DNA of 63,931 nucleotides, the filler included, from Octopus bimaculoides (Eukaryota), in the NCBI RefSeq assembly GCF_001194135.2. It is 6 parts of 4 records of this genome, joined end to end, with 100 filler letters (N's around TTAATTAATTAA, not from the genome) between each part and the next. Parts side by side here need not be neighbours in the genome. Positions count along the whole stretch, not along the records: positions 1 to 26,904 come from NC_068990.1; 5 more parts are not named here. One strand, written 5' to 3'. Below are positions 16,237-17,090 of the stretch, in pieces. Both the position numbers and the translations under genes were made by a program. The notes beneath the pieces are model-generated. The model made no database searches and was not told where the DNA came from. It saw only the letters and a program-made list of their open reading frames with translations. Every line of letters starts with the position of its first letter. Within the stretch, counting starts at the first letter, position 1.

Positions 16237-17090
16237 GTGGATAGTGGTTAGCCTGTAGCATTCTTGATCACAAAATCTTGGTTTCGATTTTCATACCGGG
16301 TAGTGTGTTGTGTTCTTCGATTCTCAGATCGGGTAATGTGTTGTTTTCTCGTTCGATTCTCAGACCGGGTAGTGTGTTGTTTTCGCGATCGATTCTCAGA
16401 CCGGGTAGTGTGTTGTGTGCGCGTTCGATTCTCAGACCGANNNNNNNNNNNNNNNNNNNNNNNNNNNNNNNNNNNNNNNNNNNNNNNNNNNNNNNNNNNN
16501 NNNNNNNNNCGATTCTCAGACCGGGTAGTGTGTTGTTTTCTCGTTCGATTCTCAGACCGGGTAGTGTGTTGTTTTCTCGTTCGATTCTCAGACCGGGTAG
16601 TGTGTTGTTTTCGCGATCGATTCTCAGACCGGGTAGTGTGTTGTGTGCGCGTTCGATTCTCAGACCGAGTAGTATGTTGTTTTCTCGTTCGATTCTCAGA
16701 CCGGGTAGTGTGTTGTTTTCTCGTTCGATTCTCAGACCGGGTAGTGTGTTGTTTCNNNNNNNNNNNNNNNNNNNNNNNNNNNNNNNNNNNNNNNNNNNNN
16801 NNNNATGTTGTTTTCTCGTTCGATTCTCAGACCGGGTAGTGTGTTGTTTTCTCGTTCGATTCTCAGACCGGGTAGTGTGTTGTTTCCTCGTTCGATTCTC
16901 AGACCGGGTAGTGTGCTGTTTTCTTAAGCAAAATATTCCATTCCACGTTGCCTCCAGTTCACTCATTCGTAAATAAATAAACCCTGCGACTGACTGGCAC
17001 CTCGGTCAGTGGAAACATTGTGATCTTGGTTATTTATACGCCATGGAAAGAGGGTAACGGACACTGTGAGGTTTTGGTCTCGAGACAGTA
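16237..17090 (+). mobile_element. tRNA-derived SINE family C with internal tandem amplification
   Basis: Head GTGGATAGTGGTTAG...GGTTTCGATTTTCATACCGGG; after the array the body resumes CTTAAGCAAAATATTCCATTCCACGTTGCCTCCAG; related head at 52850-52950(-). 3' boundary approximate. Confidence 0.7.
16282..16925 (+). repeat. 36-bp minisatellite GTTCGATTCTCAGACCGGGTAGTGTGTTGTTTTCTC, about 15 visible copies (some partial), two gaps
   Basis: Directly visible; 12-aa periodicity in the ORF track (RFSDRVVCCFLV); each unit carries the B-box-like GTTCGATTC. Confidence 0.95.

What the first reader, a model, noticed from the sequence alone, without database searches (positions are those of the whole stretch)
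16237..17000. Tandem array of RNA polymerase III B-boxes amplified inside a SINE
Seen: a tRNA-like SINE head is followed by about 15 visible copies of a 36-bp unit starting at the B-box (GTTCGATTC), then the SINE body resumes. Unit variants recur in order (…TTTTCGCGA, …GTGTGCGCG, …CCGAGTAGTATG), suggesting a higher-order repeat of up to 5 x 36 = 180 bp. Units retain several CpGs. Established: isolated or clustered B-boxes recruit TFIIIC and can act as chromatin boundaries (ETC/COC sites, tDNA insulators). Inference: a SINE-born, length-variable multi-TFIIIC platform or insulator. Two gaps mean true copy number and order are uncertain.
Basis: partly seen in the sequence, partly recalled or inferred. 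Interest (0 to 1): 0.7.

Follow-up and report, generated by a model that had tools for sequence, protein, structure and literature searches.

The report
36-bp minisatellite inside a SINE-like repeat
A real but ordinary tandem array: a 36-base piece of a probable tRNA-type mobile element, which happens to carry a polymerase III "B-box" motif, has been copied head to tail about 8 to 16 times, and no available evidence shows that it does anything.

Summary
The 36-bp tandem array is real. It runs from 16283 to 16924 in three contig pieces holding about 14.5 visible units. Twelve units carry the minimal B-box core GWTCRANNC.

The written gap lengths do not keep the repeat register. The 82 bases before gap 2 are identical to the 82 bases after it, so about 2.3 "visible" units are probably one sequence written twice. 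The defensible copy number is 8-13 at the low end, with no upper bound.

The 180-bp higher-order repeat rests on a single recurrence (units B-C-D) that straddles gap 1.

The SINE reading is plausible but unproven:
- There is an A-box-like motif at tRNA-like spacing.
- The sequence after the array resembles the CORE domain of MIR-type SINEs (5 of 2000 shuffles score as well).
- No tRNA is called, the window holds no second copy, and there is no significant target-site duplication.

No public collection I could search holds DNA of this organism, so genome-wide copies could not be examined.

The best explanation is a neutral SINE-derived minisatellite that expanded in place. This is a known kind (squamate sSats, amphibian tRNA-related tandems, Alu minisatellites). 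The TFIIIC-platform or insulator idea is an analogy that could not be tested here. Nothing in the sequence favours it over neutrality.

The parts
16234..16282 (+). Head of the SINE-like element. It holds the A-box-like motif GTGGATAGTGGTTAGCC at 16237-16253. ATAGTGG lies 41 nt upstream of the first TTCGATT, which is tRNA-like spacing.
   Evidence: Read directly. No tRNA is called, but control SINEs are not called either. No cloverleaf on folding. No similarity to the repeat unit.
16283..16315 (+). First, edge unit (u0), 33 nt. It is 30/33 identical to the consensus. Its B-box is spoiled by an extra T (GGTTTCGATT) and it contains TTTT.
   Evidence: alignment (score 54, 0/1000 shuffles as good).
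16316..16440 (+). Array block 1: units A*, B, C and 17 nt of a D-type unit.
16441..16509 (.). Assembly gap 1 (69 N). The register is not kept; the true length would be 21+36k nt.
16510..16755 (+). Array block 2: units A', A, B, C, D, A and 32 nt of an Ac-type unit. This is the longest contiguous stretch (6.8 units).
16756..16804 (.). Assembly gap 2 (49 N), probably spurious. The 82 nt on either side are identical.
   Evidence: 82-nt overlap, 0 mismatches.
16805..16924 (+). Array block 3: the end of a D-type unit, then A, Ac and the last unit. The last unit runs into unique sequence after TTTTCT.
16915..16973 (+). CORE-like segment (GCTGTTTTCTTAAGCAAAAT...GCCTCCAGTTCACTCATTCGTAAA). It is colinear with the CORE domain of the MIR consensus.
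   Evidence: score 28.5, with 5/2000 shuffles as good. It was checked against the window's SINE-B, which matches it at ACCTTGGGCAAGT (3/2000 shuffles).
16974..17094 (+). Remainder of the presumed element body. The 3' end is undefined and no A-rich or simple-repeat tail was recognised. A short TATATATG lies further downstream at 17135-17142.
   Evidence: No second copy in the window.
16201..16211 (+). Candidate target-site duplication, left copy CTGACAAATAT. The right copy CTGGCAAATAT lies at 17095-17105 (10/11 identical). Not significant.
   Evidence: D3; 23/300 shuffles give a repeat as good.

Best explanation
This is a SINE-derived minisatellite that grew in place and has no demonstrated function.

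Proposed history (inferred):
- One copy of a probable tRNA-derived, CORE-type SINE inserted here.
- A 33-36-bp segment, running from the B-box (TTCGATTC...) to the first bases of the CORE domain, was duplicated. The likely cause is slippage between short TTCT/TTC direct repeats at its two ends.
- Further slippage or unequal exchange raised the copy number.
- A block of about five units (180 bp) was then duplicated once.
- Inner units were homogenised, while the two edge units stayed behind.
- The B-box is a passenger of the amplified segment.

The short-read assembler could not resolve the array. That produced the two gaps and, at gap 2, the same 82 nt written twice.

Shown: the array, its limits, the unit variants, the broken register, the contig-end overlap, the B-box motif count, and the lack of secondary structure.

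Inferred: SINE identity, in-place growth, and neutrality.
For: - Array and sharp limits.
- Edge units are the most diverged: u0 is 30/33 with a spoiled B-box, and the last unit has 3 mismatches to the consensus. Inner units differ by 0-4.
- B-C-D recurs exactly once, at 123/125 over 125 nt. This fits one block duplication.
- A T4 run in 11 visible units on the sense strand, and in u0 itself, would be expected to hamper polymerase III read-through. This argues against the array having been retrotransposed as a whole. The terminator rule is established knowledge; its efficiency in this animal is unknown.
- B-box columns are not preferentially conserved.
- The DNA folds worse than shuffles, so no hairpin or RNA structure needs explaining.
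- The window is extremely prone to tandem repetition (130 TRF rows). It also holds a head-to-tail triplet of another SINE at 23593-24123.
- SINE-type anatomy: an A-box-like motif 41 nt upstream of TTCGATT, plus a CORE-like segment after the array.
- The kind is well documented: SINE-derived satellites with SINE-like extended terminal units in squamates (PMC10702118); tRNA-related tandem families in amphibians and thousands of TE-derived human minisatellites (PMC9659126); a SINE-derived satellite in a limpet (PMC11121367).
Against: - SINE identity is not proven. There is no tRNA call, no second copy of head or tail in 26.9 kb, no significant target-site duplication, and no recognisable tail.
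- Neutrality is a default, not a measurement. No population, orthologue, occupancy or chromatin data were available.
- None of the public collections I could search holds DNA of this organism (controls). I therefore could not see whether other loci carry one unit or many.
Confidence: 0.72

Rival explanations
1. One reading: the amplified B-boxes form a multi-site TFIIIC landing platform that acts as a chromatin boundary or insulator, with strength tuned by copy number.
For: - Twelve units match the invariant T-loop/B-box core G53 T54 T55 C56 R57 A58 ... C61. They match 8 of the 10 specified positions of GGTTCGANTCC (read).
- Precedent: the S. pombe IR-L and IR-R boundaries each hold five B-boxes bound by TFIIIC without polymerase III (PMC7474672).
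- TFIIIC binds SINEs in mammals (PMC7014570, PMC3744447).
Against: - There is no occupancy, accessibility, conservation or boundary evidence of any kind.
- B-box columns are not less variable than the rest of the unit.
- The first, oldest unit has a spoiled B-box.
- The locus lies in a stretch with no recognisable gene. It is full of SINEs and microsatellites, where nothing obvious needs insulating.
- CpG retention is not a sign of protection, since the window as a whole has CpG o/e 0.97.
- A motif match does not predict TFIIIC binding in animals (established knowledge: most SINE B-boxes are unoccupied).
Confidence: 0.05
2. The array is a built-in variable region of an active SINE subfamily, like the VNTR of SVA elements. 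It was already multi-unit in the master copy and was spread by retrotransposition.
For: - Some SINE families do carry internal duplications of about 30 nt (PMC10702118, discussion).
- The array is flanked on both sides by element sequence.
Against: - A TTTT run lies in 11 visible units, and in u0, on the transcribed strand.
- Neither the unit nor the head or tail has a second copy in the window, although two other SINE families have about 8 copies each there.
- The near-identity of the inner units points to recent local homogenisation.
Confidence: 0.1
3. It is not a SINE at all. It is a minisatellite in unique or other transposon DNA, and its unit happens to contain TTCGATTC. The A-box-like and CORE-like resemblances are chance.
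For: - No tRNA call.
- Single copy in the window.
- No significant target-site duplication.
- The collapsed element against MIR scores only 19/2000 by shuffles. Also, 5.7% of random window segments score as high, although these include true CORE-SINE copies.
- A 15-nt imperfect inverted repeat lies at 16224-16238 and 17094-17108 (I4).
Against: - Three separate SINE landmarks occur in the right order and spacing: A-box-like, B-box, CORE-like.
- The tRNA detectors also miss the window's genuine SINEs.
- The inverted repeat is no better than nine others found by chance in the same 1.5 kb.
Confidence: 0.15
4. Much of the apparent array length and its higher-order pattern is an assembly artefact. 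Haplotype variants or contig ends of one short array were placed one after another.
For: - Every recurrence of a unit variant (B, C, D, Ac) straddles a gap.
- The flanks of gap 2 overlap perfectly over 82 nt.
- Block 1 differs from the matching part of block 2 by only 2 of 125 bases.
- The register is broken at both gaps.
Against: - Block 2 alone is an uninterrupted contig with 6.8 units and ordered variants.
- The unit before A* (u0) and the unit before A (A') differ, so blocks 1 and 2 cannot be the same stretch of one haplotype.
- At least 8-9 units therefore remain under any collapse.
Confidence: 0.35

Closest known systems
SINE-derived satellites (sSat) of squamate reptiles (Vassetzky et al. 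2023, PMC10702118)
   Same: Both are tandem repeats made from an internal portion of a tRNA-related SINE. In both, the terminal units continue into ordinary SINE sequence. Short loci with few, variable units occur in both, and both are hard to assemble.
   Different: Here the unit is only 36 bp. Only one locus is known. The host appears to be an invertebrate with an octopus-like repeat content (from memory, not tested). SINE identity itself is not proven.
tRNA-related tandem families of amphibians: newt PolIII/TAN, Xenopus OAX/satellite 1, Rana/polIII, Hy/polIII (as reviewed in PMC10702118 and PMC9659126)
   Same: In both, tandem units carry polymerase III promoter-like sequence from a tRNA-related region.
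   Different: The amphibian units are 200-360+ bp, are highly abundant, and some hold both boxes and are transcribed in vitro. Here the unit is 36 bp and has a B-box only.
Alu- and B1-derived minisatellites/VNTRs of human and mouse (PMC9659126, citing Ahmed & Liang 2012, Jurka & Gentles 2006, Bois et al. 1998)
   Same: Both are local expansions of a short internal SINE segment into a minisatellite. Such expansions are common and generally regarded as neutral.
   Different: The SINE class differs (7SL-derived versus tRNA/CORE-like), and so does the segment that was amplified.
B-box clusters bound by TFIIIC without polymerase III: S. pombe IR-L/IR-R (five B-boxes each) and ETC/COC sites (PMC7474672, PMC3395662)
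   Same: Both have several B-box motifs close together and no complete polymerase III gene.
   Different: Those sites are defined by measured TFIIIC binding and by boundary phenotypes on deletion. Here there is only a motif. Those sites are also not head-to-tail 36-bp arrays.
CORE-SINEs (MIR/Ther-1; octopus OR2 according to PMC4758252)
   Same: Both show the order tRNA-like head, then B-box, then a CORE-like segment (...GCCTC-AGTT-CTCAT-GTAAA).
   Different: Similarity to the CORE is modest. No family consensus from this animal was available for comparison.
PcH-sat of the limpet Patella caerulea, derived from a Nin-SINE (PMC11121367)
   Same: It is a mollusc precedent for a tandem repeat born from a tRNA-type SINE.
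   Different: PcH-sat is an abundant pericentromeric satellite made from a SINE part that lacks boxes A and B.

Membership tests
tRNA-derived SINE | Internal polymerase III promoter: A box and B box at tRNA-like spacing | tested here: inconclusive
   The B-box core GWTCRANNC is met in 12 units. The A box is only partly met: ATAGTGGTTAG is present, but the 5' half TRGC is not. ATAGTGG to TTCGATT spacing is 41 nt.
tRNA-derived SINE | Detectable homology of the head to a tRNA | tested here: inconclusive
   No hit with ARAGORN or Rfam at E<=10. The same tests also fail on the window's two multi-copy SINE families. No cloverleaf on folding.
tRNA-derived SINE | Many dispersed copies in the genome | not testable with these tools
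   There is one copy in 26.9 kb. The searchable collections hold no DNA of this organism: its abundant SINEs are also absent from them. Protein-space detours found nothing.
tRNA-derived SINE | Target-site duplications and a 3' tail (A-rich, simple repeat or LINE-derived) | tested here: inconclusive
   The best direct repeat is 10/11 at 16201-16211 and 17095-17105, and 23/300 shuffles do as well. No tail was recognised.
CORE-SINE superfamily | Conserved CORE domain directly after the tRNA-related part | tested here: inconclusive
The score is 28.5, with 5/2000 shuffles as good. The typed consensus was validated only by its match to the window's SINE-B.
SINE-derived minisatellite/satellite | Head-to-tail units derived from an internal SINE segment, with the terminal units continuing into SINE sequence | tested here: met
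   Searches show the array and its limits. One search shows the continuation into a CORE-like body. This is conditional on the SINE identity above.
SINE-derived minisatellite/satellite | Several loci and satellite-like abundance | not testable with these tools
   No genome of this organism could be reached.
Higher-order repeat array | Multi-unit period repeated several times with higher identity than between neighbouring units | tested here: inconclusive
   There is one recurrence only: 16316-16440 against 16544-16668, at 123/125 compared with 85-87% at other lags. It spans gap 1. The period would be 180 bp only if the gap is really 21 nt.
ETC/COC-type TFIIIC site or tDNA-like insulator | B-box motif | tested here: met
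ETC/COC-type TFIIIC site or tDNA-like insulator | Measured TFIIIC occupancy without polymerase III | not testable with these tools
   Needs ChIP or CUT&RUN in the animal.
ETC/COC-type TFIIIC site or tDNA-like insulator | Boundary or enhancer-blocking activity that depends on the B-boxes | not testable with these tools
   Needs reporter, deletion or Hi-C data.
ETC/COC-type TFIIIC site or tDNA-like insulator | Selective maintenance of the B-box relative to neighbouring bases | tested here: not met
   Variable columns number 2 of 9 in the B-box against 9 of 27 elsewhere; Fisher p=0.69. Power is low because the units are few and not independent.

The most novel reading that the evidence does not exclude
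A natural head-to-tail array of a dozen or more B-boxes at 36-bp spacing is occupied by TFIIIC in a cephalopod-like genome. It would act as a copy-number-tunable chromatin boundary or condensin/cohesin loading site, born from a SINE.
Probability: 0.04. Interest if true: 0.7.

Novelty: new member of a known kind. Interest (0 to 1): 0.2.

Why it matters
If the neutral reading holds, the finding matters mostly for practical reasons:
- It is a clean small example of how a SINE segment seeds a minisatellite.
- It shows how such arrays break short-read assemblies, with gaps of wrong length and duplicated contig ends.
- It could serve as a polymorphic marker.

SINE-derived tandem repeats have been documented mainly in vertebrates, plus one limpet satellite. 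A cephalopod-type case would extend that range modestly.

Only if TFIIIC really occupies the array would it become interesting. It would then be a natural, length-variable B-box platform for studying how motif number scales boundary strength.

Tried and rejected
- **Other loci through protein space.** I translated the four open frames of the array, and later all six frames of the collapsed element plus both abundant SINEs, and searched 5.8 billion proteins. There were no hits.
- **Exact DNA scans with the unit.** A 25-mer of the unit gave 0 hits in the metagenome, prokaryote-genome and viral collections.
- **Control scans.** This genome's own abundant SINEs also gave 0 hits. The negatives above therefore say nothing about the unit.
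- **Exact-ORF look-ups.** Four unique ORFs near the array were looked up to fetch an independent assembly. None is on record.
- **Coding exons.** I looked for any exon in the window that could anchor an orthologous locus. None was convincing.
- **tRNA detection on the head.** ARAGORN at relaxed thresholds and Rfam on 94-251-nt slices were negative. Controls showed the method cannot see SINE heads here.
- **Rfam on the whole window.** It gave only microsatellite-driven miRNA artefacts.
- **Relation of the head to SINE-B.** A shared 12-mer (TTGTGAGTGGAT) suggested a link, but the full alignment was not significant (36/1000 shuffles).
- **Head or tail as decayed repeat units.** Rejected.
- **MITE reading.** A 15-nt inverted repeat suggested it, but the repeat is no better than chance pairs.
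- **Hairpin-driven slippage.** Rejected, because the array folds worse than shuffles.
- **Literature searches for sequence strings.** Searches for MIR/CORE strings and for this genome's SINEs gave nothing.

Full report
**What is there**

The window is eukaryotic, 37.6% G+C, not CpG-depleted (o/e 0.97), and broken by nine runs of N. It is saturated with simple repeats: Tandem Repeats Finder gives 130 rows in 26.9 kb. It contains no convincing coding exon.

Two SINE families are each present about eight times:
- 'SINE-A' (..GGGGTCGATGTAATCGAC..).
- 'SINE-B', which carries ACCTTGGGCAAGT and always ends in a microsatellite.

From memory these look like octopus SINEs. That is a lead only, and I could not test it.

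**The array**

Tandem Repeats Finder reports a 36-bp period in three pieces:

| Piece | Copies | Score |
|---|---|---|
| 16283-16439 | 4.4 | 230 |
| 16510-16754 | 6.8 (94% matches) | 441 |
| 16806-16924 | 3.3 | 224 |

The consensus unit is TTCGATTCTCAGACCGGGTAGTGTGTTGTTTTCTCG.

In register, the units read as follows:
- Block 1: u0, A*, B (..TTTTCGCG), C (ATCGATTC..GTGTGCGCG), D (partial, ..CCGA).
- Block 2: A', A, B, C, D (..CCGAGTAGTATG..), A, Ac (partial, ..TTTC).
- Block 3: D (partial, ATG..), A, Ac (..TTTCCTCG), last.

The flanks on either side show no similarity to the unit. The first unit u0 (16283-16315) is 30/33 identical to the consensus. The array therefore has sharp ends.

**The gaps, tested first**

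- The anchor GATTCTCAGA lies at phases 2, 14 and 1 (mod 36) in the three blocks. The written gap lengths do not keep register. The true lengths would have to be 21+36k and 26+36k.
- The last 82 nt before gap 2 are identical to the first 82 nt after it, including the D-type ATG and the Ac-type TTTCC. The simplest reading is that two contig ends hold the same sequence and gap 2 is spurious. A perfect higher-order recurrence is the alternative.
- Across gap 1 there is no such overlap. However, 16316-16440 equals 16544-16668 at 123/125.
- The units that precede these two stretches differ (u0 versus A'), so they are not one stretch of one haplotype.

The minimal single-haplotype reconstruction is u0 | A* B C D A' | A B C D A | Ac last. 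That is 13 units, with B-to-B equal to 180 bp if gap 1 is really 21 nt. If blocks 1 and 2 come from two haplotypes, as few as 8-9 units remain. An upper bound cannot be given.

The higher-order repeat therefore rests on one recurrence that spans a gap. It looks like one block duplication rather than an established periodic superstructure.

**Is it a SINE?**

For:
- The head carries GTGGATAGTGGTTAGCC (16237-16253).
- ATAGTGG lies 41 nt before the first TTCGATT, the spacing expected of tRNA A and B boxes.
- The array starts exactly at the B-box-like motif.
- The last unit runs into GCTGTTTTCTTAAGCAAAAT..GCCTCCAGTTCACTCATTCGTAAA. This aligns colinearly with the CORE domain of the MIR consensus (score 28.5; 5 of 2000 shuffles as good).
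Its only check is that the window's SINE-B matches it at ACCTTGGGCAAGT (3 of 2000 shuffles).
- An octopus CORE-SINE (OR2) is on record (PMC4758252).

Against:
- ARAGORN and Rfam call no tRNA, and the head does not fold as a cloverleaf.
- The window holds no second copy of the head, unit or tail.
- The best candidate target-site duplication is matched by 23 of 300 shuffles.
- No 3' tail is recognisable.

The tRNA negatives carry little weight, because the same tools also miss SINE-A and SINE-B. I rate SINE identity as likely but unproven.

**Attempts to see other copies**

- Exact scans for the unit in the metagenome, prokaryote and viral collections found nothing.
- This genome's own abundant SINEs are also absent from those collections. 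These collections simply do not contain the organism.
- Searches in protein space and exact-ORF look-ups also found nothing.
- The key question is whether other copies of the family have one unit or many. It stays open.

**Mechanism**

The features fit a neutral minisatellite that expanded in place:
- The edge units are the most diverged, and u0 has a spoiled B-box (GGTTTCGATT). Inner units differ by 0-4 bases.
- The unit ends share short TTC/TTCT repeats that could have seeded the first slippage (read).
- A TTTT run lies in 11 visible units and in u0 on the sense strand, and there is none on the other strand. By the established polymerase III termination rule, this makes retrotransposition of the whole array unlikely.
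- The DNA has no secondary structure.
- The surrounding genome is exceptionally prone to tandem repetition. It even holds a 2.3-copy head-to-tail run of SINE-A.

**The TFIIIC idea**

- Twelve units match the B-box core GWTCRANNC.
- Clustered B-boxes do recruit TFIIIC and act in boundaries in fission yeast (PMC7474672).
- TFIIIC binds SINEs in mammals (PMC7014570, PMC3744447).
- Nothing beyond the motif supports this reading here.
- B-box columns are not less variable than the others (2/9 against 9/27, p=0.69).
- CpG retention is uninformative in a genome region that is not CpG-depleted.
- No gene or domain edge is visible nearby.
- Occupancy and boundary activity cannot be assessed with these tools.

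**Comparison and novelty**

Tandem repeats born from internal SINE segments are documented in several places:
- Squamates, including loci with few units and SINE-like terminal units (PMC10702118).
- Amphibian tRNA-related tandem families, and thousands of human TE-derived minisatellites (PMC9659126).
- A limpet satellite (PMC11121367).

This locus is a new member of that known kind. It is notable only because the amplified piece includes the B-box. Interest is low unless TFIIIC occupancy is shown.

Noticed in passing
window 23593-24123: SINE-A stands head to tail 2.3 times with a 232-bp period at 82% identity. This is a second SINE-based tandem arrangement in the same window.
   Followed up: partly
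window 17151-17333: A small MITE-like element with perfect 9-nt terminal inverted repeats (ATACAGTAA / TTACTGTAT). It has an internal 14-bp tandem, CCGCGATAGGCGA x4, at 17263-17321.
   Followed up: no
window 760-905, 1922-2065, 4907-5023, 12857-12997, 15288-15431, 19858-19907, 20705-20847, 70-190: Eight copies of a CORE-type SINE ('SINE-B', with ACCTTGGGCAAGT). Every copy is directly followed by a microsatellite, so this family seems to seed or carry the window's AT/AC/GT repeats.
   Followed up: partly
window 16231-16242 vs SINE-B 3' part (e.g. 781-792, 12967-12978, 19875-19887): The exact 12-mer TTGTGAGTGGAT is shared between the finding's head and the 3' region of SINE-B, with GACCAAA colinear upstream. 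The whole-element alignment is not significant (36/1000 shuffles).
   Followed up: partly
window 9180-9681 and 23010-23436: Very long microsatellites: (TCTA) about 125 copies and (GAT) about 143 copies. Most of the nine N gaps abut simple repeats, so gap lengths throughout the window are probably unreliable.
   Followed up: no
window 10161-10367: A GGT-rich minisatellite with nested 15/30/60-bp periods, next to a 716-N gap.
   Followed up: no
window 4097-4213, 18520-18619, 20490-20585, 26803-26904 and others: All strong Rfam 'microRNA' hits (mir-3149, mir-297, mir-466, mir-1277...) lie on AT/AC/GT microsatellite palindromes. All are below the gathering scores, so they are artefacts.
   Followed up: yes
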